A stretch of 64,000 nucleotides of DNA from IMG/VR virus record IMGVR_UViG_3300037258_000590, positions 1 through 64,000 of that record. One strand, written 5' to 3'. The notes beneath the pieces were generated by a model. That model was not told where the DNA came from and made no database searches. It worked only from the letters and a program-made list of their open reading frames with translations. Made by a program: the position numbers and the translations under genes. Positions 1 to 62,640 of the stretch are shown piece after piece. Within the stretch, counting starts at the first letter, position 1; each line of letters begins with the position of its first letter.

Positions 1-256
1 GAGGACCGTAGCCCTGCCCCTGGGGAGGACCGTAGCCCTGCCCCTGGGGAGGACCGTAGCCCTGCCCCTGGGGAGGACCGTAGCCCTGCCCCTGGGGAGG
101 ACCGTAGCCCTGCCCCTGGGGAGGACCCGGGGGCGGCGCGTATCCCTGCCCCTGGGGAGGACCGTAGCCCTGCCCCTGGGGAGGACCGTAGCCCTGCCCC
201 TGGGGAGGACCGTAGCCCTGCCCCTGGGGAGGACCCGGGGGCGGCGCGTATCCCTG
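1..256 (+). repeat. Coding tandem repeat: eight 24-bp units (GAGGACCGTAGCCCTGCCCCTGGG) interrupted by two 36-bp variant units
   Basis: Perfect units at 1-120 (x5) and 157-228 (x3); variants start at 121 and 229 (second one partial); reads PQGQGYGP on the minus strand. Confidence 0.95.
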
Positions 257-568: not shown

Positions 569-3451
569 TCAGCGCTGGACCGGTGAGTGACCAGGGCAGC
601 CCGGGTTGTAGTCCCGGGCAGATTCAGGCCGGAAAAACGGGCAGAAGTAACAAATGTCATCTCCCGGGGCAATCGGGACATTCCCGATGTTGATCTGGCC
701 GGCCAGCACCCGCCGGGCGACCTCGCGCCGGAACGCCGTCTGGTCCAGTACGTCCGCGATCAGCGCGTCATCGCCGGGGCCGCAGTCGTGCGTCCACAGG
801 TACATCGAGTCCAGTGAGGATGCTGTCCGCGGCAGGGCGGCCAGGACGACGCGCCGGACCGGAAACCCGAGGTTGCGGTACCCGGCCGCGTACAGCAGCA
901 GCTGGACCTGGTAATGCCTCGGCGGCCCGGCGGCCGACATGACCTTGGCCATCGATGTCGGGCCGAGGCAGTTGTGCACCGGGATCAGCTGCTCGCCGGC
1001 CAGGTACAGATGGTCCGGGCTGTCGACGTCGATGCACCGGGTCGGCACGGACAGAACTGGCTTGATGTTCCGGACGATCCGGAACCTGGACCGTGCTGAG
1101 CCTTCCGCCCGGACCTGGGCCGCCTTGCGCTGGAGCCGGAACGGGTTCGCTCCGTGCGGCGTGAACTCTACGTAATACCCGGTCACGGGCAGGCCGGATT
1201 CCGTGGACTGGTGCGGGGCGATGTGCGCCTTCCAGCCGAGCGTGGCTGCTAGTTCAGCGACCGAGACGGCCAGGTGCTTGCTCGTTGTGCTGAATACTGC
1301 ACGCTTCCGCGGCTTGTTCCAGTTCCCGTCTGTATCCATCAGCCCTTGCAGCAGGGCCAGCCGTTGCTCGTAAGATCCGCGCAGGTATTCCGGCGGTACC
1401 TGCTTGACCCCGGTCAGGCGTCCGTGGCTGCCAGGCCATGCAGGATCACGCCACTGCAAGCCGGTTACGCGGAGTTGCCCGCTGAGCCCGTAGATGGTGC
1501 GCACGGATTTCCGCTTGCCATGGGGAGGGCTGACTGTGTAGCCGCAGGCCCGGATCTGGCCGGACAGGTCTTCTGCGTCTTTGATGCCGGCACCGATCGT
1601 GCCGCTGTGCACGCTGCCGTCTCCGAGCCAGCAGCCCAGGACGTACGGGTGCACGATCAGGTCCCGGGGAGCCAGCTCAAGCGCGCTGCCGTTGCGGAGC
1701 CGGAGCTGTCGTTGCGGTCTAGCCGTGGCGGACCATACGCGATCAGCCGCGTGTGCCGTGGGCAGCAGCATGACCGGCCATTGCGGCTTCCCGGCGGCCT
1801 CATACGGGATTTCCTGCACGTCATCGGTGATCAGCTCGCTGCCGTCATCGAACGTGATCCGGTAGCAGTCCCGGTACTGGGCGGGGTACGTCCGGGTGAC
1901 CTGGCACGGGCGCCCGTCCGTGCCGAACACGGTGTCCCCGGGCTGGAGCTGCCCCATGGTCGTCCAGCCGTCCGGCGTGGCGACCGGAGTGGAGACGAAA
2001 ATTCCTTTCCAGTCACATACTAGTTCTTCCACCCCGTCGTACAGGTCAGCCGTTCCCGGGTAGAGCGGATGGGGGGAGACGCGCTTCTCGGTGATCCACC
2101 GGTCGTAGCCGTTGAGGCCGTTCTCCAGGGAGAAGTGCTCGGCCAGCCACGCGTGCACCGCGGTCCCGACGATCGACGGCCACGGGTCTGCCACGTGATT
2201 CGTGACCGGCTCGCCCGCGAACTTTCCGACGACCTGGCGATCGCAATTTCCTGTCATCAGGTCGTCGGCCAGAGCGAAGGCTCCGGCTTCTCCGGTTATC
2301 GCGCAATACACGGATTCCGTGCGTCCTGTAGCCCGGACAGACTCCACGATCCAGAAAGGGTCACGTTCAGGGGCGAGCGAGGCGGTCTGGGCACGCTGAG
2401 CGTGCCGCGTTGTCAGGAAGAACCAGTCTGGCAGGTCGCGGCGGCGCAGGCTCAGCTTGTATAGCGGGGTTTCGGCTGTCGCCGGCCTGGTTCCGGAGAT
2501 GCCGAGCCTCATGTTTTCCTGTATCAGGCCGTACCCGATCCCGCAGACCGCCGCCGCCTCCCGGACGAACTCCAGGTGTCCCCGGTACGCTGAGGAGATT
2601 GAGCAGTGCCCGTCGTCGGTGACACACCCGTCCGCGGCAAAGTAGCCTGCGAGCCAGCTCATGAGGAACGATGCGGATTCATCAATGGGCGGAAGCCTCT
2701 TCCAGAAACGCGGCAGCCTCTCCACCATGGAATGTGCATGAGCGTGAGAAGGATCGTGACGCACCTTGTGCTCACCTGGGAAGAATCGCAGCATCGCCTC
2801 ATCCTTACCGTTGTGGTAGAGGATGAGCCTCGCGGCGCGATGCGTGCTGCCATTACTGCCTTTCGTGCCATCTCCGAACACGAAGCCCTGGGCTACGGCG
2901 AAAGACATCATCGTGGCGCTCTTAGGCTTGGCCTGACGTAGCTGCGCCAGGCGGTGACCAGGGCGCAGATCGCGAGTCTCCAGTTTCTGCTGCTTGCGGT
3001 TTTTCTGGCCCTGACCTGACCAGTACGAGCGGTACCAGTGGTGCTCAGCTGTAGCGAACACGATTTTGCTGTCCCTGTTCCGGCGCAGGGTGATCTCGTA
3101 AAGTTCCTGCTCGCCGAAATACTCGACTGGCACTTGGCAGAATTTGCCCCATCGTTTACGGATGTCGCTGCCCTTGTAGCGCAGGGGAACGAGGAGTTCG
3201 GCGCTGCCATTTTTAGCCAGTTCACGGATTGCCCGGATGCCCTGGCGGGTAACTACTTCCGTCTCCCCGCTGAGGCACGCGCTCCCGATCTCGGACGGCC
3301 CGAGGGTGCGCTGCACGCTGCGGGGCATCCGGTGCGCCTGGCGGATGATGATCTCGCGCAGCTCACGGGCGTACCGGGCCCCGAACGCGGTATTGCTGCC
3401 CGCGATGGCCGGAGTGGTACCCATGAACTGCCCTGGTGTCATGGTGGTCAT
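569..3451 (-). CDS. Cas4/RecB-like PD-(D/E)XK exonuclease with 4Fe-4S cysteines, interrupted by two inteins (spliced product about 271 aa)
   Basis: Exteins rejoin as GPSEIGSA-CDRQ, GTAVH, GTADL..D, DWK-CLG, YQVQLLLYAAG and C-terminal CYFCPF..C. Confidence 0.88.
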   Translation of the reverse strand: MTTMTPGQFMGTTPAIAGSNTAFGARYARELREIIIRQAHRMPRSVQRTLGPSEIGSACLSGETEVVTRQGIRAIRELAKNGSAELLVPLRYKGSDIRKRWGKFCQVPVEYFGEQELYEITLRRNRDSKIVFATAEHHWYRSYWSGQGQKNRKQQKLETRDLRPGHRLAQLRQAKPKSATMMSFAVAQGFVFGDGTKGSNGSTHRAARLILYHNGKDEAMLRFFPGEHKVRHDPSHAHAHSMVERLPRFWKRLPPIDESASFLMSWLAGYFAADGCVTDDGHCSISSAYRGHLEFVREAAAVCGIGYGLIQENMRLGISGTRPATAETPLYKLSLRRRDLPDWFFLTTRHAQRAQTASLAPERDPFWIVESVRATGRTESVYCAITGEAGAFALADDLMTGNCDRQVVGKFAGEPVTNHVADPWPSIVGTAVHAWLAEHFSLENGLNGYDRWITEKRVSPHPLYPGTADLYDGVEELVCDWKGIFVSTPVATPDGWTTMGQLQPGDTVFGTDGRPCQVTRTYPAQYRDCYRITFDDGSELITDDVQEIPYEAAGKPQWPVMLLPTAHAADRVWSATARPQRQLRLRNGSALELAPRDLIVHPYVLGCWLGDGSVHSGTIGAGIKDAEDLSGQIRACGYTVSPPHGKRKSVRTIYGLSGQLRVTGLQWRDPAWPGSHGRLTGVKQVPPEYLRGSYEQRLALLQGLMDTDGNWNKPRKRAVFSTTSKHLAVSVAELAATLGWKAHIAPHQSTESGLPVTGYYVEFTPHGANPFRLQRKAAQVRAEGSARSRFRIVRNIKPVLSVPTRCIDVDSPDHLYLAGEQLIPVHNCLGPTSMAKVMSAAGPPRHYQVQLLLYAAGYRNLGFPVRRVVLAALPRTASSLDSMYLWTHDCGPGDDALIADVLDQTAFRREVARRVLAGQINIGNVPIAPGDDICYFCPFFRPESARDYNPGCPGHSPVQR
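971..2005 (-). mobile_element. Intein 2 (345 aa), class-3-like, Gly at position 1, with LAGLIDADG endonuclease
   Basis: GIFVSTPVATPDGWTTMG aligns with block A; LGCWLGDG and QGLMDTDG motifs; block F TRCIDVDSPDHLYLAG; ends IPVHN followed by Cys+1. Confidence 0.88.
2246..3277 (-). mobile_element. Intein 1 (344 aa) with LAGLIDADG homing endonuclease
   Basis: Starts CLSGETEVVT; block B TAEHHW; GFVFGDG and AGYFAADG motifs; ends TGN followed by Cys+1. Confidence 0.9.
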
Positions 3452-3675
3452 GAGCTGATCCTGTCATCGGGCAGTGACATTTTCCGGCGGGACCGCCGCA
3501 GCCGCCACGCTCGCGGCCAGTCTTGCGGCCACGCTCGCGGCCAGAGCAGGAGCGGGTGGCGGCGCAGCCCGGCCGCGAAAGCCGGCCAGCCGTGCACGCC
3601 TGGCCACGCGGCCAGGGCGGTGCGTACCGCGACGGGTACCGCGATGACAGCCAGGAGACGCCGCCGGGCCTTCAT
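3448..3675 (-). CDS. Hypothetical protein, Trp/Arg-rich with hydrophobic N-terminus
   Basis: ATGA overlaps at both ends (3672-3675, 3448-3451). Confidence 0.6.
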   Translation of the reverse strand: MKARRRLLAVIAVPVAVRTALAAWPGVHGWPAFAAGLRRHPLLLWPRAWPQDWPRAWRLRRSRRKMSLPDDRISS

Positions 3676-49773: not shown

Positions 49774-50836
49774 CTAAATCCGTTCCAGCAGTTTAAGGAA
49801 CCGCTTGGCGTTGTTCTCGAAGGTCCGGTCTGCTACAGCTAGCCGTGCCTTCTCGGCGGCAGCCTCACGTTCCTGATCATGCTTGAGCCACCACCGCAGC
49901 TTCTCGCTGGCGTCTCCGGGCCCGGCAAATGCTGGCAGCATCGGGAACAGCTCGTCCCCTTCGGGCCGGGGATCACGCAGGAAGAACAGCCCGCAGGCGG
50001 CCATCTCCACTTCGCGCGGGCCAAGGGCCGAACCGTGCCAGGAGCCCCCGTCCTCGGTCTCGCGCCGGTAGAAATTCAGGCCCGCCCGAGCGTTCCGGTA
50101 GACCTCGGCGGCTTCGTCGTTGTTCACGCAGTCGGGGTTGCCGAGCCCGGTCCCGACGAACCCGGCCAGCGGTGAGCCCGGCGGTACCGAGCCCCAGTCG
50201 TTGCCGCCGAGCAGCACGTCAAGCCCGTGCAGGTCCATCGCCTCGAAGAACTCGACCCTGCTCTTGAACGCGGTGCCGATGAACGCCAGGTCGGCGGCTA
50301 GCTCCTGGTTCAGCGGCCCGGTCCGCGGGTGGTGGACGGCTGGCCGGTAGGCGTGCGGCATGTACTCACTGACCGCGTACTGCCGGAACCGGTCCAGGTT
50401 GGCCGGATCGTTGAGCAGGTTCAGGTGCGCGAGCTGGCCGCGGGTCAGCTGCTCCTCGTCTTGGTAGGGCGATTCCGTGTGCAAGATGACGATCGTGTGC
50501 CGCCGGTCGCGCAGCAGCTGCATGGTCCCGGCGTTAAGGAAGAACCCCGAGATGAACAAGATGACGTCCGGCCAGAACGTGTAGCACGCATGGCTCAGCC
50601 CTTGCATGGCCGCCGCGAACGCCTGCTGCGGGGTCATCGCCGCCCGGCAGATCGGGTGCCCGGCTTCGTCCTTTTCACCGGTATCAATCATGGCCATGTT
50701 ATAGAAAATAAGCCGGTCGTAAATTCAGGTTGTACACGGCAACTTCACAGCCCAGATCGTTCAGTGCCTCCGTCCAACCCGCGTATACGTCATGTACGGA
50801 AAAGTCCGGGCCAGGGTGCACGACTAGAATACGCAT
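49774..50836 (-). CDS. CgeB-type (GT-B) glycosyltransferase, split by a frameshift near 50700-50725
   Basis: 5' piece MRILVVHPGPDFSVHDVYAGW..AL..LG.EV..YNLN (stop at 50699) continues in the +1 frame as DRLIFYNMAM...; ADLAFIGT, Y....GLN, REVEMAACG. Confidence 0.8.
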
Positions 50837-51037: not shown

Positions 51038-52906
51038 TCACGTGAAACCCTTGGCGCTTTGCCACGCAGCCAGCGCCCTGGCCACGCGCTCGTTCGCGCC
51101 GACGTGACCTCGTTCCGGCCAGTCTCCTATCACGGCGTTGAGCGCCTGGTCCGCAGGGTCCGCTACCGGGCCCGGGGGTGCCGGCACTGGTGCTGGTGGT
51201 ACCGGAACCGGCACCGGAGCGGGTGCCGGTGCTGGCGGTACCGGAACCGGGAACGGCTTTCCGGTGATCGCCTGGAACTCCGCGGCGAACGCGGTCAGGT
51301 CGACGCCCGCCTGGAATTCGGCGGTATTAAGCTGCTCCTCCCAGACCGGGAACCACAGTTCCTCCGCCTCGTGCGCCCAGAATGCGTCGGTGAAGCTGGT
51401 CTCCTCCGAATTGTGGGAGGCAAGACCCTCAGCAAAGAATGTCCTTGTGTCGGTCTGCAAGGCAATTACTTCCTGCTCGCCAACGAAAACTTTGCTAGTC
51501 AGCTGTACAGTGCGACTAATGTTGAGTCGTCCGAGAAGTTCTGGGTGGAACTTGTCGAGCAGCCGGGCGGGCCGCACAGAACCGAGGAATCGCAGAATCT
51601 CTGGCTTACGATAGATGTGCAGGCGGTGGATGTCCTTCCGCCCGGGGTGGCGGACCCCCTTAGAGGCTGCCCGTGAATCAACGTAATGTTTCGGGTTGAA
51701 TTCAAGTTCTTTCAGGCAGCGCTCTGTCTCGGCGAGCATGGCATTATTCGCCTGCGTAAATCCCAGCGTGGACGCAACAATGCCCTTTGCCTTGCCGCTG
51801 AGGTCCTGCTGCCGGAAATCCCCTTTACCGTCGAACGCGGCAGCGAGATAACCAGCTTCCCGGGATGTTCCGGTATCCCACACGTCAAGCGGCTTAATGA
51901 TCCGGGAAGCCCGCTTGCCAGTAAGCCGCAGATCCTCAGTTGCTAGCCAGTAGACTCTGTTTCCGAGGGTATGAACCAGCCATTTGTGCTCAGCCGAGCA
52001 TCGCACTTTCGTACCGTCGTTAAACTCCAGGTCATAGCAGGGCCTGACGATTTTCTGTGCAGATTCCACGCATGCTCGCCGGTAAAGCCGGCCACCCGAT
52101 CTGCCCCTGTAATTTTCTTCATCAAAGGCAAGAAGCCCGTCGCCTTCCTGAAGATCCCCCGCTGGAATCCAGTGCAAGTTAGATGTGAGTATGCGCATAC
52201 TTGAGTCTACGCACCAGGTGACGAACTTCTCATCACCGGCCATGGCCGGAGAGCCGCCCGCCACCTCGGCACCGTAGCCGCCGCACACGATCGAATGGCC
52301 GCCTTCGACCGGGCTGCCTTTCACGTAGTCCCACGGCCGCCCGGCGTCGAACTGGCTCTCCTGGACTTCCTGCACGTTGATGCCGAGCCACAGCACGCCG
52401 CCAGCAGCGATCGCCGCCTGAACCTCCCTGGCGTTCGCATGGTCGACCGCGGCGAACCCGACGAGCTTGCTGCCATCCGGGCCCGGGTTCTTGACCAGGT
52501 ATTCCAGCAGCGTCTGAATATCCATGCCGTTGTCCGCAGGCGACCCGGGTCCGGTTGTACCGGGGTCCCCAGAGGGATCGAATTGCGGGTTCTGTGTCCG
52601 GTATATTGCTAGTACGTCCGCCCAGCCCGGATAGACCTCATGCCCGCCGATCGCCTTAGAAATGACCCGGCGGATGTTCGCGAAAGTCACGGCAACACAA
52701 TCGCCGCATCCCGGAAAGCCTGGGTGAACACTATCATCGGGGCCGTTTCCGAGCATGAGCCAGCCGCCGTTCATGGCAGTAAGATAATCGACAGCCGCCG
52801 GGACAGCGAGAGCTGAGTGGCGGATGGCCGAGAACCGGATAGCCGGAGCACGCTTGGGCGGACGGCGGCCGTACGTGCCAGCGATGCGGGGAGCGGGCAT
52901 GGTCAT
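51038..52906 (-). CDS. Papain-like (C1/C39-related) cysteine peptidase with an intein and Pro-rich C-terminal extension
   Basis: AGGAG SD, TGATG coupling; LGN...GDCV.V..AN, DNG, GGHSI..GGY, FVTW|. Confidence 0.8.
   Translation of the reverse strand: MTMPAPRIAGTYGRRPPKRAPAIRFSAIRHSALAVPAAVDYLTAMNGGWLMLGNGPDDSVHPGFPGCGDCVAVTFANIRRVISKAIGGHEVYPGWADVLAIYRTQNPQFDPSGDPGTTGPGSPADNGMDIQTLLEYLVKNPGPDGSKLVGFAAVDHANAREVQAAIAAGGVLWLGINVQEVQESQFDAGRPWDYVKGSPVEGGHSIVCGGYGAEVAGGSPAMAGDEKFVTWCVDSSMRILTSNLHWIPAGDLQEGDGLLAFDEENYRGRSGGRLYRRACVESAQKIVRPCYDLEFNDGTKVRCSAEHKWLVHTLGNRVYWLATEDLRLTGKRASRIIKPLDVWDTGTSREAGYLAAAFDGKGDFRQQDLSGKAKGIVASTLGFTQANNAMLAETERCLKELEFNPKHYVDSRAASKGVRHPGRKDIHRLHIYRKPEILRFLGSVRPARLLDKFHPELLGRLNISRTVQLTSKVFVGEQEVIALQTDTRTFFAEGLASHNSEETSFTDAFWAHEAEELWFPVWEEQLNTAEFQAGVDLTAFAAEFQAITGKPFPVPVPPAPAPAPVPVPVPPAPVPAPPGPVADPADQALNAVIGDWPERGHVGANERVARALAAWQSAKGFT
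51410..52213 (-). mobile_element. Intein 3 (268 aa), degenerate LAGLIDADG
   Basis: CVDSSMRILT; block B SAEHKW; GYLAAAFDGKG; ends ASHN followed by Ser+1. Confidence 0.9.
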
Positions 52907-53325
52907 CAGGTAGCTCCTACCGTGAGGTTCAGCCGGGCACCGAAGTACGTGACGCCCGCGTATTCGATCCGGCTGTAGTTTCCTGCCGAGACCGGTTCGC
53001 AGAAATCTACTGCGCCGCCGAGCGTGGGGTCGATCATGATGCCGCCCGGGACAGACTGCCCCTCGCCATCGCCGACGCCGAGATACGTATCCAGGGCGCG
53101 CTGGGTTTTCTCGGCCGGAGCCGCGTCGGAGATGATGATCAAGACGATCAAGCTCAGGTTCACCGCGCCGTCCATGGTGACCCCGTAGGTGATGAGCGGC
53201 TGGCCGGGCAGCACGACCGAGCACGGCGGTGACACCTGGTCCCGGGCCTGAGCGTCGCAGCGCAGCCCGGTCTGCGCGGTGATCTGCGTGGCCAGCGCGT
53301 TGCGGATCGCGGTCAGGTTAGCCAT
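52906..53325 (-). CDS. Tail terminator protein
   Basis: LTAIRNALA..I.......V.PPC.VV.P...LD.Y...G..S....I..D.TLGG. Confidence 0.8.
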   Translation of the reverse strand: MANLTAIRNALATQITAQTGLRCDAQARDQVSPPCSVVLPGQPLITYGVTMDGAVNLSLIVLIIISDAAPAEKTQRALDTYLGVGDGEGQSVPGGIMIDPTLGGAVDFCEPVSAGNYSRIEYAGVTYFGARLNLTVGAT

Positions 53326-53329
53326 GAAG

Positions 53330-53488
53330 TCACCACATCCCGCATATTTTCCACAACCAGACAGCCGCCGTACAGTGATCATGGCAGACGAGCGCGTACG
53401 CCGCGTCATCTACGCAGCTGGTGAACCATAGCCGCAAGCGGGTCCGGCGGGGCAGCGCAGTGCGCAGGCGTACGAGATGGTCAGCCAT
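53330..53488 (-). CDS. Small hypothetical protein
   Basis: Overlaps previous stop; 52 aa. Confidence 0.55.
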   Translation of the reverse strand: MADHLVRLRTALPRRTRLRLWFTSCVDDAAYALVCHDHCTAAVWLWKICGMW

Positions 53489-56176: not shown

Positions 56177-56320
56177 TCAGACTTCCCCTTTCAACCGGAT
56201 GACCACGCCGGGCAGGTGCAGCCATGCACTGTGGTCTTTGACCCAGAACAAGCCGAAGCGCAAGTCATGAGAATCGACCAGGATCCGGCGCGTGCGTGAG
56301 TGTTTCCGGATATGCCTCAT
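56177..56320 (-). CDS. Small hypothetical protein
   Basis: ATGA coupling to head-tail adaptor stop. Confidence 0.55.
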   Translation of the reverse strand: MRHIRKHSRTRRILVDSHDLRFGLFWVKDHSAWLHLPGVVIRLKGEV

Positions 56321-57258
56321 ACGCCTACCTTTTTCCGCCCGCGGATAAACGGCCGCAGCAATTCTACCAGCCACGGGTTACTTTGTATTCTTGCGATGCC
56401 GATATCGGAAACCCCGGCCACGCCGAACGGGGCATCCTTGGATTTGAACACGTCGGCGGACAGGATCCGGCAGGCTTCGGGTACCTGCCAGGGCACCGCG
56501 GGCCAGCCCCATGTAGCGGCTATCTGCACCCTGTTAACCGGTGCGAGCGGCCACAGGTACGGGAACGTGACCCCGGAGTTGATGACCCGGACGTGCTCAT
56601 ACGGCCGGGGCTGCCCGGTAGACCCGGTGTTGAACGTGTCTTTTCCCAGGTAAAGCTGATAGTCAGTGTTCTGCACCCAGGGCTGCTCATAAGTTCCGTC
56701 ACCGTCGAAGTCGACCTTGAACGTGCTGACCGACACGACGTCATCGATCCGCAGTTCGTAGATGTCCTGAGGTACGAAAGTCCGGGTTTCGGTGATCCGG
56801 TTGAAATGGCGTCCGCAATATGAGTTCAGCCACCCGCTGGATGCCGCAATGGCGAACTGCATGTTGCTGTTGTCCGTGGCGTCAGTAATCCCGAGCCGGT
56901 CGTTCATCTCCTCCAGGCCGACGTACCACAGCTGGGAAGCGGCTGCCGGGAGAACCCGCCAGGTACCCGGCTGGACGTCGGAGACGGCTCCGGTGCCGAC
57001 CCACGCGAAACCCCACAGCCCGTCCGCTCCTGGTACGGACGGGGAGCACGCCACGGACAGCGTGTACTTGCCGGTGCCTACCTTGATGACATCAGCCGGA
57101 GAGAGCCCGGCGTAAGTGTGCGTAACCGCGACGTTAGCCGGGTCGGTGATGATGCATGAAACCGCTGTGGGGTCAGCAGGAACGCCGCCGGCATCGGTGA
57201 ACGTATTGGAGATCAGCGCGATTTCGTTTACGTCATCGTAGAAAACCGTGGCCGTCAT
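56317..57258 (-). CDS. Head-to-tail adaptor (gp6/gp15-like) with N-terminal Ig-like domain
   Basis: GAGGAG SD; F.D..G.P.DP...G.Y.......G.W...W.GTG (Ig-like); Y....E...LGI.D......AI.A.S..L..YCGR.F...W..VP..V..A..I. Confidence 0.82.
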   Translation of the reverse strand: MTATVFYDDVNEIALISNTFTDAGGVPADPTAVSCIITDPANVAVTHTYAGLSPADVIKVGTGKYTLSVACSPSVPGADGLWGFAWVGTGAVSDVQPGTWRVLPAAASQLWYVGLEEMNDRLGITDATDNSNMQFAIAASSGWLNSYCGRHFNRITETRTFVPQDIYELRIDDVVSVSTFKVDFDGDGTYEQPWVQNTDYQLYLGKDTFNTGSTGQPRPYEHVRVINSGVTFPYLWPLAPVNRVQIAATWGWPAVPWQVPEACRILSADVFKSKDAPFGVAGVSDIGIARIQSNPWLVELLRPFIRGRKKVGV

Positions 57259-57309
57259 CCGGGGCTCCTCACGTCGGAGACCCCGCACGCCCGGTGGCTG
57301 GCCTGGTCT

Positions 57310-60300
57310 TCAGGATACGCCGGGGAAGGTCTGGAACGGCTGGGTCACGCCAGCTACCGCGGTGCCGCGTGCGGTAACTGAAGCCGCTGACACAGAAATC
57401 TTCGTGACACCGTAAGCGGTGCTGAAGCCCTTCACCTGCGGCGGATGAGTCAGGCCCGTCGCGGTCAGCCTCGCGGTGCCGGCCAGTGCTCCGGCGCCTT
57501 GCTGCGCAGCCAGCGTAATCAGGGCTGCGATCCCGCCCAGAGCTGCCGCAGATCGCAGTACAGTGCCGGAGCCGAGTGACCCGGCAGCCCCGAGCACGGC
57601 TCCGGCACCGCCGGCGGCAGCCCCGGCCGCGGTCAGCGCTCCGGCTGCACCGAGCAGGCCGGCGCCCGCGATGCCGCCTCCGGATGCGAGCGAAGCTGTC
57701 GCGCTCAACGAGGTAACCGCCCCGGGCACGGCAGCGCTCGCGAGCGATCCCGCGGCAGCAAGCGCCGACCCGCTGGACGGGATCGCCCCGAGCGATCCTG
57801 CGGCGCCGATCGTCGTAACGACGCCGAGGGCGGCTGCGCTCGCGAGCGATCCCGCACTGCTGAGGATTCCACCCGGGCCCTGAACGGAAACGCTGCCAAG
57901 CGATCCGGCCGCGGCCAAGGCCGCCGGAGCTGCGATCGCGGATACCGCTGCCAGCGAGCCAGCGGCAGCCAGGCCGGAACCGCTGGCCGGATTGGCGCTG
58001 AGCGACCCGGCTGCAGTCAGTGTCGTGATAGCACTGAGCACCGCCGCCGCGGTCAGCGAGCCCGCTGCGGCTAGAGCAGCCGGGGCCGCCACGGCTGAGG
58101 AAGCAGCCAGGAGCCCGGCCGCGGCCAGCACAGCGGGTACCCCGGCGATTACCGCGGGCGCGGCCAGCGAGCCAGCCCCGCTGAGCACCGCGCCGCCCGC
58201 CGGGGTTCCGGTCAGTGACCCGGCCGCGGCCAGGGCGGTAATCGCGCCGAGGACACCGGCGGCCGACAGCGCTCCCGCACCCCCGAGCGAACCAGCTGCG
58301 CCCTGTGTCGCGACGTCACCCAGAGAACCTGTCGCGCTCAGCGTGACAAGCGCTGCCTGGACCGCCATGACGCCCAGTGATGCCGCACCGCCGAGCGTGA
58401 CACCAGCGCTCAGGATAACCGCGGTACTCAGTGATCCGGCTGCCGCCAAGGCTGCAGGCGCGGCCAGAGCCGCTGCGGTACCCAGCGAACCCCCGCCGCT
58501 GAGCACGGAACCCATGACCGAAGCTGCCGCCAGCGATCCCGCGGCCCCGGTCGTTGCCCCCGCGCCCTGGCCGGCGCCGTTGCCCGCAGACCCTGCCGCC
58601 ATCAGGACCGCAGGCGCGCTGAGGACGCCCGCTGTAGCCAGCATCCCCGCCGCGCCGAGCGTGCCGCCCGCACCCTGGATCGTGACCGTACCGAGCGACC
58701 CAGCCGCGCCGAGCGTGCCGCCCGCACCCTGGATCGTGACCGTACCGAGCGACCCAGCCGCGCCGAGCGTAACGCCTGCACCCTGGATCGTGACAGCATT
58801 CAGCGATCCCGTCGCGCTGAGCGTGACAATTGCGTTCTGGGCTGCCGTGGCTGCCAGTGAGCCAGCCGCGCCAAGCGTGACGCCCGCACTCTGGGCTGCT
58901 GCGGCGGCCAGTGATCCGGCAGCCGCCAGTCCTGCGGGCGCGCCGAGCATTTCTGCGCTGGCTAGTGACCCGGCCGCGCCCAGGGCAGTGATCGCGCCGA
59001 GCATTTCTGTGCTGGCTAGTGACCCGGCCGCGGCCAGGGCGGTAACGGCGCCCTGCAGGGCAGCCGGGGCTAGCGATCCAGCGCCGCCGAGCAGGCCTCC
59101 GGCATCCTGGACGGCGGCATTACCAAGCGAAGCTGCCGCACCGAAGGCCGTGCCCGCACCCTGGGTGGCGGCTGTGGCAGCCGATCCGGCGGCGCTGAGA
59201 GCCGCGCCCGCGCTCTGAGTGGCTGCCGTGGCAACCGACCCCCGGGCGGGCAGCGTGGCGATGCCCTGCAGGGCAGTCGGGGCAGCGAGGATGAGCACCC
59301 AGTCCGGGTCGCCCTGGCTGTTGTTTCCCCAGGTGCTGGAGTTGTACGACGAACCGGCCGTGACTGAGGTTTTCGCCCCGGTGATCGGGTCCCCCCGGTA
59401 CGCCTGGTATCCGGAGACCATCTTGGCCTGGTCAATGCCGATGGTCGTGGCGTGCGACAGGTAGATCAGTGCCAGGCTGGAACCCGAGCCGCTGTCCGGG
59501 GTCCGGCTCGCGGTGACGAACGAATCGGTCGTCGCGGCTTCGTACTGGCCGGAACCGCCGCCCGAGACGAACGTGGCCGCCCGCGAGCCCCGGCCGCTGG
59601 TGACCAGCGCCGATGCGGTGTCCGGCATCAGGGCCTGCCAGCCGGGCAGCGATTCGACCAGCGTGCGGATGTTCGCGGCGTTGTTGGCGTAGAACCAGTC
59701 GGTAGAGGAAGCAGCCAGCGCGGTAGCGGCCCATTGCCAGGTTGACTCAGAACCTTGCACGACACCGCGGGCGCCCGACGTGATCGCGTGCCAGGCGTCC
59801 TGCCTGAAAGCCCGGTCAAAAGCTGTAGAACCAGTGCCGCCTGCGTAAAGCGGGCCGCCCTGGTAAAAATACCCGTCGAGCTGGATAACCGGAATAGGAT
59901 CAGGCTCGCCCCAGGCGTCCTCTATACCTAGGTACGTGAGGTTATATGTGTAATTCCCGTTAAAGGCGGCATGGTTATTCCCCCAGTACTGGACCGTGCC
60001 GGTGGTACCCGTACCGAGGTCTTCACGGGAATCAGATTCCGCGTAATTGTGGATGCTGATGATGTGCGTATCGCCGCCGCCGCGCAGCCCGGTCAGCAGC
60101 GATTCATATAGCGTGTCCGTTGCTCCGGGGCTTCCGCCCCCGCTTCCGAGCGTGCCGCCAGAATTGCCGAAATAGTCATTCCCGACCATCCAGATTATGT
60201 TCTTGGTGGTCGCGTACCGGGCAGCGAGAGCGGCGCCGTACTGGCCGAACTGGGTTGCGGTCAGTGAGGTTAGCGCTCCGCCCGTGGCGAAATCTCCGGG

Positions 60301-62640
60301 GCCGTTGTAGCCGATATTGAGCATGGCCGTCATGCCGTTACGTGCGCATGCGGTCAGGAAGTAATCGACCCTGGCCCAGAATGTGCTGTTCAGCCCGATC
60401 GCCGCCGAGCCCGCTACCCCGGCGGTCGTGGCTGCAGTGCCGTTGACCGTGAACGGGAACACGCCGTCCCAGGTGCGGCCGTCCGCGAAAGCGCCGCCGT
60501 TTTCTGAGTTGCCGAGCGGGTCAAGGTAGATGGCGGTGAAACCCTGACCGCCGCGGGCGTTGCAGTACGTGTCGATGTCGGTCTGGTACGTGCCCGCCCA
60601 CCGGCCCGCGTTGGGGATCAGCCCCCACGGGTTGTCGCCCAGCAAGAACCGCGGGCTGCCGTTCTGGTCAGCGAAATACCCGGTGCCGCCGCCAGCGAGG
60701 CCGGTGATGACCAGCGGGCCTTGCGTGGCGGTCAGTGACCCGGCCGCGGTCAGGGTCGCGCCCGCTGCTTGAGCCGCGGCGGTACTCAGCGATGCGGTTC
60801 CGGCGATAGCCGCGCCTGCGCCGGTCACTGCCACGCCCTGGATGGCGATGATGAGGCCCGCGCCTAGAGCGGTGCCCTGCGTTGACCAGTGCCCGGCATC
60901 GGCAAGCGCGGCGGGCCCGGCTGAGGCCTGGCTGTTGGACTGGGTGAACAGGACAGCTGCTCCGGAGGCGGGCAGCTTGCCCTGGCTTGTCCATCCAGAG
61001 CCGGTCTCAGTCCAGGTGAGCGTGGCGCTAGCGCGTTCCTGGGCGAAGACGGAAACCGCGAACTCGCCGTAGGCACCCAGGATTCCGGTGGTGATAGAGA
61101 ACGCGACGGTTCCCGTGCCGCTGCCGGTCTGCTGAACGGCAGAGACGTCAAGCGGAGACGTCAGGTTCGCGCCGGCCAGTTCATACATGAAGCAGGTCAG
61201 TACCGGGGTACCGGAGAGCGTCTGGGTGAACGTGGGCGCGGCATCGCTCCCTGCGGCGGTCTTGACCCAGGCGTCAACTACAGCCTTGGACGTGCCGGAC
61301 GGATTGTTCCCGACGCTGCCTGAAATGAGCCGGGACCAGCCTGTAGCGCTGGTGGAGATATTCGGCGTCTCCGCAGTCGTTGACCCGGCTGAGACGATAG
61401 CCAGCAGCAAGCTGCCTGCGGTCGGGGCCTGGCCGTAGACGGCGGTAAGCGGGCTCGACGTACCGCTGGCTTTGCCGGCACTGCCGACCAGTGTCACCGG
61501 CAGGTGCACAGCCAGGGTAAGCGGCTGGGTAGCCGTGGCCGCCACGCTGTCGGTCACTTCGACGGTGAACGCAGAGCCGCCTTGGCCGGAGGACGGGGTG
61601 CCGGTGACGGCTCCAGTCGATGAGTTTAGCGATGCCCAGGACGGCAGTGCCCCGGACGATACCGACCAGGTGTACGGGGGGGCCCCGCCGGAAGCGGCCA
61701 GCGTCTGGGAGTAGGTGATGCTCGTGGCTGCCGCGGGGAGCGCCGTAGTGGCTACGGCCAGCGCTGACGGAGCCTGGACTTCGAAAGCGATAGCGCCGTA
61801 GAAGTCGTTGGCCTGGGTCCAGACCAGGCTGGTGGTGCCAGCCGAGGAAGGGTTGGTGCCGGCGGCGGTGTTGCCGGCGGCGGAGTTCGTGCCGGCGTCC
61901 TTTTCGTACCGTTTGGTGCCGGTGGTGAACGCGACGCCGCCCGCTCCGCATGTCATGAACGCCAGGCACAGGTTCCCTGACGTAGTGCTGGGCACGGTGA
62001 TCGTCGCGCCGGCGACGAACTGAGCGAAGCCGGTGACGGTGGCGCTTTCTCCGCCAGACCCGGTGACGGACACCGACCCGCCGGTGATCACGTCAAACGT
62101 GGCGCCGGTCACGGTGATCGTGACGGTCTGCGCACCGGCCGCCGGGGCGTCGATCCTGAAGACTTCAACGAACCCGGCGGTGCCGGTCAGCCCGGTGAAC
62201 CCGCTGGACTGCTTGCCCATCGAGGTCATCGCCGTGCCGCCGTACGTGGCGGCTGTGGCATAGGCGGTGTCGGCAGCGCCTCCGTTGTTGCTGACGGCGA
62301 GGCCCGCGTATACCGCTGACGGCGTTCCGGCGGGGGTATGGGTCCACGTCAGCGGACTGGTGGCGCTGGAGGTGCCCGCTGAGGACGGCCCGGCGGCGTC
62401 GAACGCGACGCCTGCGCCGCCGGCGATAAGCCGGACCGGGCGCCCGGAGCGCAAATATCCGATGATCATGCCAGGGTGGCGTTCGCCGCGCCCCCAGGTC
62501 TTCAGGTAACGCCGGGTCAGCACCCAGGGAAGGACAGCAGGCGGCGGTGGCGGCCGGAACCGCCGCGGGCACGCCAAAGCCAGCATGAGGGCCAGCGAGA
62601 AGCGAAGGAGAACCCAGGCGGCTCGCGCCGGAGCAGCCAT
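57310..62640 (-). CDS. 1776-aa fibre-like protein: beta-sandwich domains, He_PIG Ig repeat, DUF4038/GH140 apiosidase-like hydrolase with C-terminal beta domain, long Ala/Gly repeat stalk
   Basis: GGAGG SD; YF....G.P.FLLGD.PW, G..GF.AI, FW.RVD......G, Y...LA.RY....IIW..GND, P.PV......Y, R...W..I.SGA.G...G, W..L.PD, DP.TG, DWVL.L; TTALP......YSQTL.ASGG.PPYTW. Confidence 0.85.
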   Translation of the reverse strand: MAAPARAAWVLLRFSLALMLALACPRRFRPPPPPAVLPWVLTRRYLKTWGRGERHPGMIIGYLRSGRPVRLIAGGAGVAFDAAGPSSAGTSSATSPLTWTHTPAGTPSAVYAGLAVSNNGGAADTAYATAATYGGTAMTSMGKQSSGFTGLTGTAGFVEVFRIDAPAAGAQTVTITVTGATFDVITGGSVSVTGSGGESATVTGFAQFVAGATITVPSTTSGNLCLAFMTCGAGGVAFTTGTKRYEKDAGTNSAAGNTAAGTNPSSAGTTSLVWTQANDFYGAIAFEVQAPSALAVATTALPAAATSITYSQTLAASGGAPPYTWSVSSGALPSWASLNSSTGAVTGTPSSGQGGSAFTVEVTDSVAATATQPLTLAVHLPVTLVGSAGKASGTSSPLTAVYGQAPTAGSLLLAIVSAGSTTAETPNISTSATGWSRLISGSVGNNPSGTSKAVVDAWVKTAAGSDAAPTFTQTLSGTPVLTCFMYELAGANLTSPLDVSAVQQTGSGTGTVAFSITTGILGAYGEFAVSVFAQERASATLTWTETGSGWTSQGKLPASGAAVLFTQSNSQASAGPAALADAGHWSTQGTALGAGLIIAIQGVAVTGAGAAIAGTASLSTAAAQAAGATLTAAGSLTATQGPLVITGLAGGGTGYFADQNGSPRFLLGDNPWGLIPNAGRWAGTYQTDIDTYCNARGGQGFTAIYLDPLGNSENGGAFADGRTWDGVFPFTVNGTAATTAGVAGSAAIGLNSTFWARVDYFLTACARNGMTAMLNIGYNGPGDFATGGALTSLTATQFGQYGAALAARYATTKNIIWMVGNDYFGNSGGTLGSGGGSPGATDTLYESLLTGLRGGGDTHIISIHNYAESDSREDLGTGTTGTVQYWGNNHAAFNGNYTYNLTYLGIEDAWGEPDPIPVIQLDGYFYQGGPLYAGGTGSTAFDRAFRQDAWHAITSGARGVVQGSESTWQWAATALAASSTDWFYANNAANIRTLVESLPGWQALMPDTASALVTSGRGSRAATFVSGGGSGQYEAATTDSFVTASRTPDSGSGSSLALIYLSHATTIGIDQAKMVSGYQAYRGDPITGAKTSVTAGSSYNSSTWGNNSQGDPDWVLILAAPTALQGIATLPARGSVATAATQSAGAALSAAGSAATAATQGAGTAFGAAASLGNAAVQDAGGLLGGAGSLAPAALQGAVTALAAAGSLASTEMLGAITALGAAGSLASAEMLGAPAGLAAAGSLAAAAAQSAGVTLGAAGSLAATAAQNAIVTLSATGSLNAVTIQGAGVTLGAAGSLGTVTIQGAGGTLGAAGSLGTVTIQGAGGTLGAAGMLATAGVLSAPAVLMAAGSAGNGAGQGAGATTGAAGSLAAASVMGSVLSGGGSLGTAAALAAPAALAAAGSLSTAVILSAGVTLGGAASLGVMAVQAALVTLSATGSLGDVATQGAAGSLGGAGALSAAGVLGAITALAAAGSLTGTPAGGAVLSGAGSLAAPAVIAGVPAVLAAAGLLAASSAVAAPAALAAAGSLTAAAVLSAITTLTAAGSLSANPASGSGLAAAGSLAAVSAIAAPAALAAAGSLGSVSVQGPGGILSSAGSLASAAALGVVTTIGAAGSLGAIPSSGSALAAAGSLASAAVPGAVTSLSATASLASGGGIAGAGLLGAAGALTAAGAAAGGAGAVLGAAGSLGSGTVLRSAAALGGIAALITLAAQQGAGALAGTARLTATGLTHPPQVKGFSTAYGVTKISVSAASVTARGTAVAGVTQPFQTFPGVS
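58649..58800 (-). repeat. Near-perfect 54-bp coding repeats (TIQGAGGTLGAAGSLGTV) within a longer degenerate 18-aa repeat region
   Basis: Direct repeats seen in DNA; degenerate copies span about 57470-59280. Confidence 0.8.

What the first reader, a model, noticed from the sequence alone, without database searches (positions are those of the whole stretch)
51038..52906. Intein in a papain-like peptidase of the morphogenesis region
Seen: a 268-aa intein inserted at FVTW|S, just after the GGH catalytic-His strand and at the position equivalent to the papain N-S-W-G motif. Established: inteins concentrate in replication, recombination and nucleotide-metabolism proteins and terminases; cell-wall or maturation peptidases are rare hosts. 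The endonuclease looks degenerate, so retention may reflect a regulatory role, such as keeping a lytic or processing protease inactive until splicing.
Basis: partly seen in the sequence, partly recalled or inferred. Interest (0 to 1): 0.7.

Follow-up and report, generated by a model that had tools for sequence, protein, structure and literature searches.

The report
Intein splitting a phage papain-like peptidase
A soil phage gene for a papain-type cysteine peptidase is interrupted, right in its catalytic core, by a self-splicing intein. The intein sits at a site not seen occupied anywhere else and its homing nuclease has just lost its key catalytic residue, which looks like an ordinary selfish element at the end of its invasion cycle rather than a regulatory switch.

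Summary
Gene 51038..52906 (-) encodes a 622-aa precursor, and residues 232-499 (window 51410..52213) form a canonical class-1 intein (Cys1, SxxH, His-Asn, Ser+1). Uninterrupted homologues have no residue there. The extein has no Pfam or NCBIfam hit, but it folds as a C1 papain-like peptidase (Z 18.5 to xylellain) with invariant Asn, Cys, His and Trp.

This peptidase superfamily is not a rare intein host in metagenomes. I found at least 71 other intein-bearing members, all carrying the same intein family, at four other core sites. These sites lie before the catalytic Cys, after the catalytic His, and in two strands.

The window's site (Trp231|Ser232) is unique among everything searched. 111 of 112 empty alleles have a +1 residue that cannot support splicing. 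The endonuclease domain is intact except for Glu130 to Lys in the LAGLIDADG motif (Glu or Asp in 115 of 115 relatives), and this change is fixed in four soil samples.

Intein GC is 11 points below the extein. The nearest extein relatives (73-76% identity) lack the intein. This fits a selfish intein whose nuclease has recently died. Nothing found supports conditional splicing, which remains untested.

The parts
51038..52906 (-). Precursor gene: papain-like peptidase interrupted by an intein (622 aa plus stop)
52214..52906 (-). N-extein (aa 1-231). It holds the conserved N-terminal segment (aa 10-24), Asn54, the CGDC motif with the invariant Cys70, GGH with the invariant His204, GYG, and the invariant Trp231 at intein position -1.
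52697..52708 (-). CGDC motif. Cys70 is the predicted catalytic nucleophile (112/112 in homologues) and opens the long helix, as papain Cys25 does.
52295..52303 (-). GGH motif. His204 is the predicted catalytic His (112/112) and aligns to the catalytic His of cathepsin K and fibroinase.
51410..52213 (-). Class-1 intein, 268 aa. It has Cys1, block B S73-A-E-H76, T254, T258, and H267-N268. GC is 55%.
51548..51877 (-). Endonuclease-like insert of the intein (intein residues ~113-222): one alpha-beta-beta-alpha-beta-beta-alpha LAGLIDADG unit only
51821..51853 (-). LAGLIDADG-type motif GYLAAAFDGKG. Codon AAA at 51824-51826 gives Lys130 where 114 of 115 relatives have Glu and one has Asp.
51038..51409 (-). 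C-extein (aa 500-622) plus stop. It holds Ser+1 (51407-51409), the last strands and helices of the peptidase fold, a Pro-rich linker (51167-51256), and a 42-aa C-terminal helical tail (51041-51166).
52906..53409 (-). Upstream neighbour: tail-terminator-like protein (phrog_17840). Its stop overlaps the peptidase start.
49774..50836 (-). Downstream neighbour: glycosyltransferase (PF13524). It is syntenic with the peptidase in related phage contigs. Here it is split over two frames near 50705-50718.

Best explanation
A selfish class-1 intein has invaded the catalytic core of a phage papain-like (C1-type) cysteine peptidase at a site not otherwise seen occupied: after the invariant Trp231, 27 residues past the catalytic His. 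It belongs to a large family of ~260-270-aa phage inteins that carry a single LAGLIDADG unit.

**Shown**
- The insertion is exact.
- All splicing residues are intact.
- The intein has a HINT fold.
- The host has a papain fold with invariant Asn, Cys, His and Trp.
- The same intein family occupies four other core sites of the same peptidase superfamily.
- This intein branches on its own, inside the clade that holds the inteins sitting before the catalytic Cys.
- The catalytic Glu of its LAGLIDADG motif is Lys here and nowhere else.

**Inferred**
- The precursor is translated as one chain.
- The intein excises itself by the standard four-step pathway: N-S acyl shift at Cys1, trans-esterification to Ser+1, Asn268 cyclisation, then O-N shift.
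- The product is a 354-aa peptidase with Ser in place of the usual Ala after Trp231.
- The intein reached this site by an ectopic jump from a related intein, with Ser at +1 either pre-existing or co-converted.
- The intein came from a lower-GC donor.
- Its endonuclease has since been inactivated, which is the late stage of the homing cycle.
- Splicing is constitutive and has no adaptive role.
- The substrate of the peptidase is unknown; a lysis or cell-wall role is the best guess.
For: - **Insertion:** precise and absent from 112 homologues.
- **Splicing residues:** Cys1, S73xxH76, T254, T258, H267 and N268 match family invariants, and Ser+1 also occurs in relatives.
- **Intein structure:** model pLDDT 95.4, with top PDB matches all inteins.
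- **Extein fold:** VIA-align Z 18.5 to xylellain and 13-15 to about 50 C1 peptidases, covering the whole mature enzyme.
- **Extein residues:** N, C, H and W are invariant in 112/112.
- **Other occupied alleles:** 71 further intein-bearing members of the superfamily. By site: before the catalytic Cys 33, after the catalytic His 17, before the EEAW strand 18, in the W|LGIN strand 3, and none at Trp231.
- **Phylogeny:** inteins cluster by insertion site. The window's intein is a lone branch (length 0.43) within the peptidase-Cys clade (SH-aLRT 92; quick tree only).
- **Nuclease:** E130 is E in 114 and D in 1 of 115 relatives, and K here. The AAA codon is identical in contigs from four soil runs.
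- **Composition:** intein GC is 11 points below the extein, against 2.5-5 points in three relatives.
- **Empty alleles:** the closest exteins (73-76% identity) are empty. +1 in empty alleles is A 99, G 9, M 2, C 1, E 1. A related phage with the empty site ERFITW|AA co-occurs in the same sample.
Against: - Splicing has not been observed. The intein deviates from at least 85% consensus at Pro4 to Ser and Asp12 to Asn in block A, and its effect there is unknown.
- The intein is at most 55% identical to any sampled relative, so no donor is identified and 'recent' rests on composition and on the otherwise intact nuclease domain.
- The intein tree is a quick search, because the careful search did not finish.
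- Only the best 120 of 266 and 150 of 3355 database hits were inspected.
- The pattern scans for further alleles at this site required exact extein motifs.
- The peptidase assignment rests on fold and conserved residues. There is no Pfam hit, and no Asn at the position that by spacing corresponds to papain Asn175.
Confidence: 0.72

Rival explanations
1. Conditional protein splicing as a zymogen-type switch. The intein is retained because it keeps a lytic or processing peptidase inactive until a cue such as redox state, temperature, metal or time after infection allows splicing.
For: - The insertion lies in the beta-sheet next to the catalytic His strand, so the precursor is probably inactive.
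- The nuclease is dead, yet the intein is fixed in four soil samples.
- The intein has five Cys (1, 48, 59, 72, 166), and the N-extein has a CGDC motif that could in principle form redox traps.
- Conditional splicing is documented for other inteins, for example mycobacterial DnaB (PMC6195587, listed).
- A homologue sits in a lysis cassette, where timing matters.
Against: - No second allele occupies this site in any collection searched.
- The closest extein relatives work without an intein.
- The family already has a conserved N-terminal segment that aligns to pro-regions of C1 zymogens, which is a more ordinary means of latency.
- The nuclease domain shows one lesion rather than the decay or deletion expected after long domestication.
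- The foreign GC argues for recent arrival.
- Inteins at catalytic motifs are the rule for selfish inteins in general, and here for four other sites of the same fold.
Confidence: 0.1
2. The intein no longer splices (or splices poorly) and the peptidase gene is effectively inactivated. The gene is dispensable cargo in a region under relaxed selection.
For: - Block A deviates from the family consensus (Pro4 to Ser, Asp12 to Asn).
- Trp at -1 with Ser at +1 is a combination not seen in the relatives listed.
- The adjacent glycosyltransferase gene is split by a frameshift.
- The gene family is patchy among phages and has no match in about 50,000 cultured phage genomes.
Against: - A 1.87-kb ORF is fully open.
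- All invariant splicing residues, and all four invariant peptidase residues, are retained.
- The gene is translationally coupled to the tail-terminator gene.
- It is near-identical across four samples, with a mix of synonymous and non-synonymous SNPs too few to judge selection.
Confidence: 0.12
3. The endonuclease is still active despite Lys130, for instance as a dimer with another intein copy or with altered chemistry, and the intein is still homing.
For: - The rest of the nuclease domain is conserved.
- The family has only one LAGLIDADG unit and would have to act as a dimer in any case.
Against: - The acidic residue at this position is the metal ligand in LAGLIDADG enzymes (established knowledge) and is E or D in 115 of 115 relatives.
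- Empty alleles of related phages coexist in the same sample.
- No other occupied allele was found.
Confidence: 0.04

Closest known systems
Inteins of cluster C1 mycobacteriophage terminase-like proteins (e.g. phages Alice, ET08), and of Gordonia and Ralstonia phages
   Same: The architecture is collinear over all 268 residues at 34% identity, with a class-1 HINT domain plus a short LAGLIDADG-type insert. They are phage-borne and sit in conserved motifs (Kelley et al. 2016, PMC5050341).
   Different: The host protein is a terminase-like ATPase rather than a peptidase. They are only distantly related, and their nuclease motif was not examined here.
Metagenomic inteins of the same family at other sites of the same papain-like peptidase superfamily (e.g. 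P0124, P0135, P0241, P0128)
   Same: They are 45-55% identical inteins in the same host fold, inserted at catalytic-core motifs. Most use a Cys at +1, and for the commonest site that Cys is the catalytic one.
   Different: Their sites are GD|C, GGH|C, Y|C[DE]EA and AY|CGVN, never Trp231|Ser. All keep Glu or Asp in the LAGLIDADG motif. Their GC is close to that of their exteins.
Two-motif LAGLIDADG inteins with solved structures (PI-SceI, PI-PfuI, TliVMA and PhoVMA inteins)
   Same: They are the best structural matches. They share the HINT splicing domain with an inserted LAGLIDADG endonuclease.
   Different: Those enzymes have two LAGLIDADG units (blocks C and E) and 360-540 residues. This family has one unit and about 268 residues.
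Papain-family (MEROPS C1) peptidases, closest being xylellain of Xylella fastidiosa (PDB 3OIS)
   Same: They share the fold (Z 18.5), a nucleophile Cys at a helix N-terminus, a His followed by GYG, a Trp after the next strand, and an N-terminal segment that aligns to the pro-region.
   Different: Sequence identity is about 12-16%. There is no PF00112 hit. Asn replaces Gln as the putative oxyanion residue. No Asn is found at the Asn175-equivalent spacing. The protein also has an extra Pro-rich linker and a C-terminal tail.
Conditional (stress-sensing) inteins such as Mycobacterium smegmatis DnaB intein 1
   Same: It is an intein in an essential motif of its host, so splicing gates host activity.
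   Different: No evidence of conditionality exists here, and no conserved vertical inheritance of this allele was found.

Membership tests
Intein (class 1) | In-frame insertion absent from orthologues, with seamless extein flanks | tested here: met
   No homologue residue falls in the 268 intein columns. 112 empty homologues were found.
Intein (class 1) | Nucleophile at position 1 (Cys/Ser) and block B TxxH | tested here: met
   Cys1 is present in 115/115 relatives. Block B is S73-A-E-H76, with Ser the family norm (107/115) and His invariant.
Intein (class 1) | C-terminal His-Asn followed by Cys, Ser or Thr at +1 | tested here: met
   The C-terminal junction is ASHN|S.
Intein (class 1) | HINT fold | tested here: met
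   The AF2 model has pLDDT 95.4. Foldseek probability is 1.0 to PI-PfuI, PI-SceI and the DnaB, DnaE and RecA mini-inteins.
Intein (class 1) | Protein splicing actually occurs | not testable with these tools
   This needs expression and detection of the ligated exteins.
LAGLIDADG homing endonuclease | LAGLIDADG helix within an alpha-beta-beta-alpha-beta-beta-alpha core | tested here: met
   The PF14528 hit is below its cut-off (E 0.002). The model shows one such unit at intein residues 118-212.
LAGLIDADG homing endonuclease | Two units in one chain, as in known intein endonucleases, or a homodimer | tested here: inconclusive
   Only one unit is present. Dimerisation was not tested. No significant dyad symmetry was found at the target site.
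LAGLIDADG homing endonuclease | Acidic metal-binding residue at the end of the motif | tested here: not met
   Lys130 (codon AAA) stands where 114 relatives have Glu and one has Asp. The codon is confirmed in four runs.
Papain-like cysteine peptidase (clan CA, C1-like) | Papain fold (L helical domain plus R beta domain) | tested here: met
   This was tested on the intein-free homologue P0003 (about 74% identical over the N-extein). Z is 18.5 to 3OIS, and 13-15 to cathepsins, falcipains and papain, over the whole mature enzyme.
Papain-like cysteine peptidase (clan CA, C1-like) | Catalytic Cys and His | tested here: met
   Cys70 and His204 are invariant in 112/112. The His aligns to the catalytic His of cathepsin K and fibroinase in profile hits.
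Papain-like cysteine peptidase (clan CA, C1-like) | Oxyanion-hole Gln and the third triad residue (Asn175 equivalent) | tested here: inconclusive
   An invariant Asn lies 6 residues before the Cys in the family consensus, and 16 before it in the window's subgroup. The position two residues before the Trp is I, V, E or L. Glu at +3 is 109/112. No residue-level structural superposition was available.
Papain-like cysteine peptidase (clan CA, C1-like) | Match to curated family models (PF00112 etc.) | tested here: not met
   There is no Pfam or NCBIfam hit, and the window's own precursor matches no PHROG. Only the homologues P0077 (E 3e-17) and P0003 (E 0.0014) match phrog_19005, unknown function.
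Papain-like cysteine peptidase (clan CA, C1-like) | Proteolytic activity | not testable with these tools
   This needs an enzyme assay.
Phage lysis-cassette enzyme (endolysin-type peptidase) | Adjacent to holin or endolysin; carries a cell-wall-binding module | tested here: inconclusive
   The homologue P0077 lies directly before an endolysin (phrog_17214) and a holin (phrog_9752) in a Streptomyces prophage. In the window the gene lies between the tail terminator and a glycosyltransferase, while SLT and NlpC/P60 enzymes lie at 28.3-29.8 kb. No known wall-binding domain was found in the C-terminal tail.

The most novel reading that the evidence does not exclude
The intein is kept as a timing or redox-controlled latch on a lysis or processing cysteine peptidase. 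On this reading the phage has domesticated a nuclease-dead intein to produce its protease as an inert precursor, and the five recurrent core sites in this peptidase superfamily reflect repeated selection for such latches rather than mere tolerance of selfish elements.
Probability: 0.08. Interest if true: 0.75.

Novelty: new member of a known kind. Interest (0 to 1): 0.4.

Why it matters
This adds a protease to the list of natural intein hosts. Neither survey of actinophage inteins that I read lists any peptidase. It also shows that one uncharacterised family of phage papain-like peptidases is a major reservoir for a widespread family of short, single-LAGLIDADG inteins, with five separate insertion points bracketing the catalytic Cys, His and Trp.

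This gives intein biologists a natural series for studying site switching within one fold. It also provides a snapshot of the homing cycle: a nuclease killed by one substitution while the rest of the domain stays intact.

For protein engineers, it offers naturally validated split points in the papain fold. It does not, on present evidence, reveal a new regulatory mechanism.

Tried and rejected
- **Family models.** Pfam, PHROGs and NCBIfam on the precursor and its pieces gave no extein family. The only hits were sub-threshold LAGLIDADG_3 and Intein_splicing, plus a weak match to an intein-containing radical-SAM model.
- **Cultured phages.** tblastn of the N-extein against about 50,700 phage genomes gave no match.
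- **A second allele at Trp231|Ser232.**
  - I mapped junctions in 119 plus 89 related intein hosts.
  - The search for related loci in IMG/VR returned only a truncated copy of the same phage and one empty homologue.
  - DNA pattern scans for TW|C..P[DE]TR and GDE[KR]F[IV]TW|C in viral and metagenome contigs returned only chance hits outside ORFs.
- **Terminase-like hosts.** Proteins with an intein at F|SDETAF looked as if they might share the site (C-flank S-[DE]-E-T-[AS]-F). They are not papain-like (A1 profile E about 1; they look like terminase-type ATPases), and their inteins fall in the other half of the tree.
- **Dyad symmetry.** A homodimeric nuclease would predict dyad symmetry at the empty target site. 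The best result was 7 of 11 within 6 nt of the junction, which is not unusual for this gene.
- **Literature.** Searches for inteins in papain-like or cysteine proteases found nothing relevant.
- **Intein tree.** The careful maximum-likelihood search did not finish in the time allowed, so only the quick tree is reported.
- **Active-site superposition.** A residue-level superposition on papain could not be made, because model coordinates are not exposed to scripts.
Full report
**What is there**

The minus-strand ORF 51038..52906 encodes 622 residues. Its ATG shares a base with the TGA of the preceding gene and follows a GGAG by 7 nt. Residues 232-499 (window 51410..52213) begin with Cys and end with His-Asn, followed by Ser.

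A search with the N-extein alone found 336 proteins of about 240-400 aa. None had a Pfam domain and nearly all were unnamed. Aligned with the precursor, none of the 40 best has a residue in any intein column. Their sequences run straight through as ..F[IV]TW|A.E[TS]SF...

The intein is 55.3% GC against 66.4% for the exteins (GC3 60% against 75%).

**The insert is a true class-1 intein**

- It matches 266 proteins, with E down to 1e-123, collinear over all 268 residues in nearly all of the 120 listed.
- I extracted 116 family members from those hits. In these, Cys1, His76 (block B, preceded by Ser73 in 107 of 115), Thr254, Thr258, His267 and Asn268 are invariant or nearly so. The window's copy has all of them.
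- An AlphaFold model built on 90 sequences has pLDDT 95.4. Its best PDB matches are PI-PfuI, TliVMA, PI-SceI and many mini-inteins.
- Between the two halves of the HINT domain lies a single alpha-beta-beta-alpha-beta-beta-alpha unit headed by the motif GYLAAAFDG-x-G.
- Characterised actinophage and archaeal intein nucleases have two such units: blocks C and E in Kelley et al. 2016 (PMC5050341), and the structures matched.

**State of the endonuclease**

The acidic residue that ends the LAGLIDADG motif is the metal ligand in this enzyme class (established knowledge). It is Glu in 114 and Asp in 1 of 115 relatives. The window has Lys, codon AAA at 51824-51826.

At positions conserved in at least 85% of the family, the window's copy deviates at only three other places: Pro4 to Ser, Asp12 to Asn, and Arg203 to Lys. 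So the domain is not decayed. It carries one lesion of the inactivating kind.

Contigs from three further soil-metagenome runs cover this codon without a difference and cross both intein junctions. The allele and the substitution are therefore real and fixed in the four samples.

**The host protein**

Neither the precursor nor its extein pieces match any family in Pfam, PHROGs or NCBIfam. Among its homologues, P0077 matches phrog_19005 (function unknown) at E 3e-17 and P0003 only weakly at E 0.0014.

I modelled the intein-free homologue P0003 (about 74% identical over the N-extein) from 112 sequences, giving pLDDT 84. The model's matches were:

- Foldseek hits in PDB, Swiss-Prot models, AFDB clusters and viral models are almost all C1 peptidases.
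- VIA-align gives Z 18.5 to xylellain and 13-15 to about 50 cathepsins, falcipains and papain, spanning the whole mature enzyme.
- The family profile's only PDB sequence hits, though weak, are cathepsin K, fibroinase and silicatein. They align the family's GGH to the catalytic His and its GYG to the cathepsin GYG.

Asn (six residues before the Cys in the family consensus), Cys, His and the Trp at the insertion site are invariant in 112 of 112. The Cys opens the long helix, as papain Cys25 does. By spacing from GYG, the Trp corresponds to papain Trp177.

The residue two positions earlier, where papain has Asn175, is Ile, Val, Glu or Leu. The N-S-W-G analogy therefore holds only for the Trp (plus my recollection of the papain motif). 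The model's first ~40 residues, which include the conserved Y-G-R-R-x-P-K-R-A-P segment, align to the pro-regions of C1 zymogens.

I conclude that the extein is a papain-like cysteine peptidase by fold and catalytic dyad, but it is not a member of any curated family.

**Genomic setting**

The window is the first 64 kb of a 210,383-bp, 67.6% GC contig. Its ends overlap by 127 bp within 24-bp tandem repeats, so it is probably a complete phage genome. It occurs in four soil metagenomes.

| Window position (minus strand) | Gene |
|---|---|
| 56320-57288 | head-tail adaptor |
| 52909-53409 | tail terminator |
| 51038-52906 | the peptidase |
| 49777-50697 | PF13524 glycosyltransferase |
| 39197-45289 | 2031-aa tape-measure protein |
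| further downstream | glycine-rich tail proteins |

Lysozyme-like and NlpC/P60 proteins lie at 28.3-29.8 kb.

The peptidase-glycosyltransferase pairing recurs in related contigs. In a Streptomyces kaempferi prophage, however, the homologue sits after the minor tail genes and immediately before an endolysin and a holin. Atlas and BFVD neighbours include C1 domains fused to peptidoglycan-binding, muramidase or GH19 modules.

A cell-wall or lysis role is therefore the best guess. It is not shown, and a virion-processing role is not excluded.

**This peptidase family is a common intein host, but this site is unique**

After removing the intein in silico, 52 of the 119 listed hosts of related inteins match the extein-family profile at E below 1e-3. 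An exhaustive HMMER search of 1.84 billion cluster representatives added 19 more. Mapped onto the window's numbering, the occupied sites are:

| Site (window numbering) | Location | Occupied alleles |
|---|---|---|
| Asp69\|Cys70 | immediately before the catalytic Cys, which serves as the +1 nucleophile | 33 |
| His204\|+1 | immediately after the catalytic His | 17 |
| ~Glu245\|Ala246 | before the conserved EEAW strand | 18 |
| Trp173\|Leu174 | in the W\|LGIN strand | 3 |
| Trp231\|Ser232 | after the invariant Trp | 1 (the window only) |

Targeted DNA pattern scans of IMG/VR and of the JGI metagenome contigs for a Cys-initiated insert after ..GDE[KR]F[IV]TW found only chance matches.

The same intein family also sits in other host proteins:

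- DinG-type helicases;
- terminases;
- DUF6424 proteins;
- PF16473 exonucleases;
- a protein with the flank motif DCG|CGFWAY.

At 34% identity, it also occurs in the terminase-like proteins of cluster C1 mycobacteriophages and in Gordonia and Ralstonia phages.

Neither the 2016 mycobacteriophage survey (13 host groups) nor the 2025 PhagesDB survey (784 inteins, 19 host proteins) lists a peptidase. Full-text searches found no report of an intein in a papain-like protease.

**How it probably got there, and why the site is rare**

In a quick maximum-likelihood tree, inteins group by insertion site, as expected if nuclease specificity defines lineages. The window's intein is a lone, fairly long branch (0.43). 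It lies inside the clade (SH-aLRT 92) that holds the peptidase Cys-site inteins, the DCG|CGFW inteins and a few EEAW-site inteins. This points to an ectopic move from a related intein. No donor closer than 55% identity was sampled.

In 112 empty alleles the residue after the Trp is Ala 99, Gly 9, Met 2, Cys 1 and Glu 1. All but one could not support splicing. The window has Ser (TCG against GCG in the closest phage), one base from the insertion point. Invasion therefore needs either a rare pre-existing Ser, Thr or Cys, or co-conversion of that codon.

A lower-coverage contig in the same soil sample carries a related peptidase gene with the empty site ERFITW|AA.

The GC deficit of the intein is 11 points. 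In three relatives at other sites it is 2.5-5 points. This suggests arrival from a lower-GC genome without time to ameliorate.

**Assessment of the regulatory idea**

An insert in the beta-sheet beside the catalytic His strand very probably makes the precursor inactive. That is true of every intein in a catalytic motif, and it is equally true of the 71 alleles at the other four sites. Several observations fit the standard homing cycle of a selfish element whose nuclease has recently been lost:

- this occupied site is a singleton;
- the nearest relatives are empty;
- the intein is compositionally foreign;
- the nuclease domain is almost intact.

Long-term retention for function would predict vertically inherited copies in diverged phages and erosion of the nuclease domain. 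Neither is seen. The idea is not excluded, because splicing kinetics cannot be computed. I give it about one chance in ten.

**Limits**

- Splicing, proteolysis and DNA cleavage are all inferred.
- Only the top 120 and top 150 hits of the two large searches were inspected.
- The tree is a quick search.
- The equivalence of Trp231 to papain Trp177 rests on motif spacing and whole-domain structural alignment, not on a residue-level superposition.

Noticed in passing
window 569..3463 (-): A 960-aa exonuclease-like ORF (phrog_1674) appears to carry two more inteins. One starts C-L-S-G-E-T, has its own LAGLIDADG motif and ends ..T-G-N|C. The second ends ..P-V-H-N|C, has a PF14528 hit at aa 695-747 and an internal ..R-C-I-D.. 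block reminiscent of class-3 inteins. I read the boundaries by eye only.
   Followed up: partly
genome contig C1 107012..109855 (-) and 130353..133052 (-), outside the window: There are two further intein-like inserts. One is in a terminase-large-subunit-like ORF. The other is a mini-intein in the P-loop (GSGK|A-L-A-L-D...T-H-N|S) of an FtsK/HerA-like ATPase. Both have the ..V-P-V-R-C-I.. block typical of class-3 phage inteins. The 210-kb phage thus seems to hold at least five inteins.
   Followed up: partly
window 49774..50836 (-): The glycosyltransferase next to the peptidase is split over two reading frames. Residues 1-46 and 41-364 of the uninterrupted 364-aa homologue in L001 match frames -1 and -2, overlapping near 50705-50718 in an A/T-rich stretch. 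This could be a frameshift mutation, an assembly error or programmed slippage. I did not check it in the reads.
   Followed up: partly
intein family as a whole (A2; window 51548..51877): The whole family (more than 200 members) has only one LAGLIDADG alpha-beta-beta-alpha-beta-beta-alpha unit with a conserved catalytic Glu, unlike the two-unit nucleases of characterised inteins. If active, it would have to work as a dimer of inteins. I found no report of this, and no clear dyad symmetry at this target site.
   Followed up: partly
P0177, P0207, P0224, P0300 (terminase-like ATPases from metagenomes): Inteins of the same family sit at ..F|S-D-E-T-A-F in what looks like a Walker-B motif. That C-flank closely resembles the window's W|S-E-E-T-S-F, yet the hosts are unrelated and the inteins fall in a different clade. 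It may be coincidence, or a hint of target-sequence mimicry behind site switching.
   Followed up: partly
window 1..130 and genome end (210256..210383): The contig begins and ends in 24-bp tandem repeats (unit GAGGACCGTAGCCCTGCCCCTGGG), and the first 100 bases recur at 210256. This could be a circular assembly overlap or a terminal repeat array.
   Followed up: no
window 57310..62640 (-): A 1776-aa protein with an apiosidase-like/GH5 glycosidase domain and an Ig-like (He_PIG) domain lies just upstream of the head-tail adaptor gene. This is an unusually large glycosidase within the structural module.
   Followed up: no
window 52835..52879 (-), aa 10-24 of the peptidase: The conserved N-terminal segment (Y-G-R-R-x-P-K-R-A-P) is modelled with high confidence and aligns to the pro-regions of C1 zymogens and xylellain. 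This suggests the family has its own built-in latency peptide, independent of any intein.
   Followed up: partly
L007 (IMG/VR contig, 10.5 kb): A contig from another metagenome is 100% identical over residues 1-106 of the peptidase but ends before the intein site. The same phage is therefore present in IMG/VR only as a fragment.
   Followed up: no
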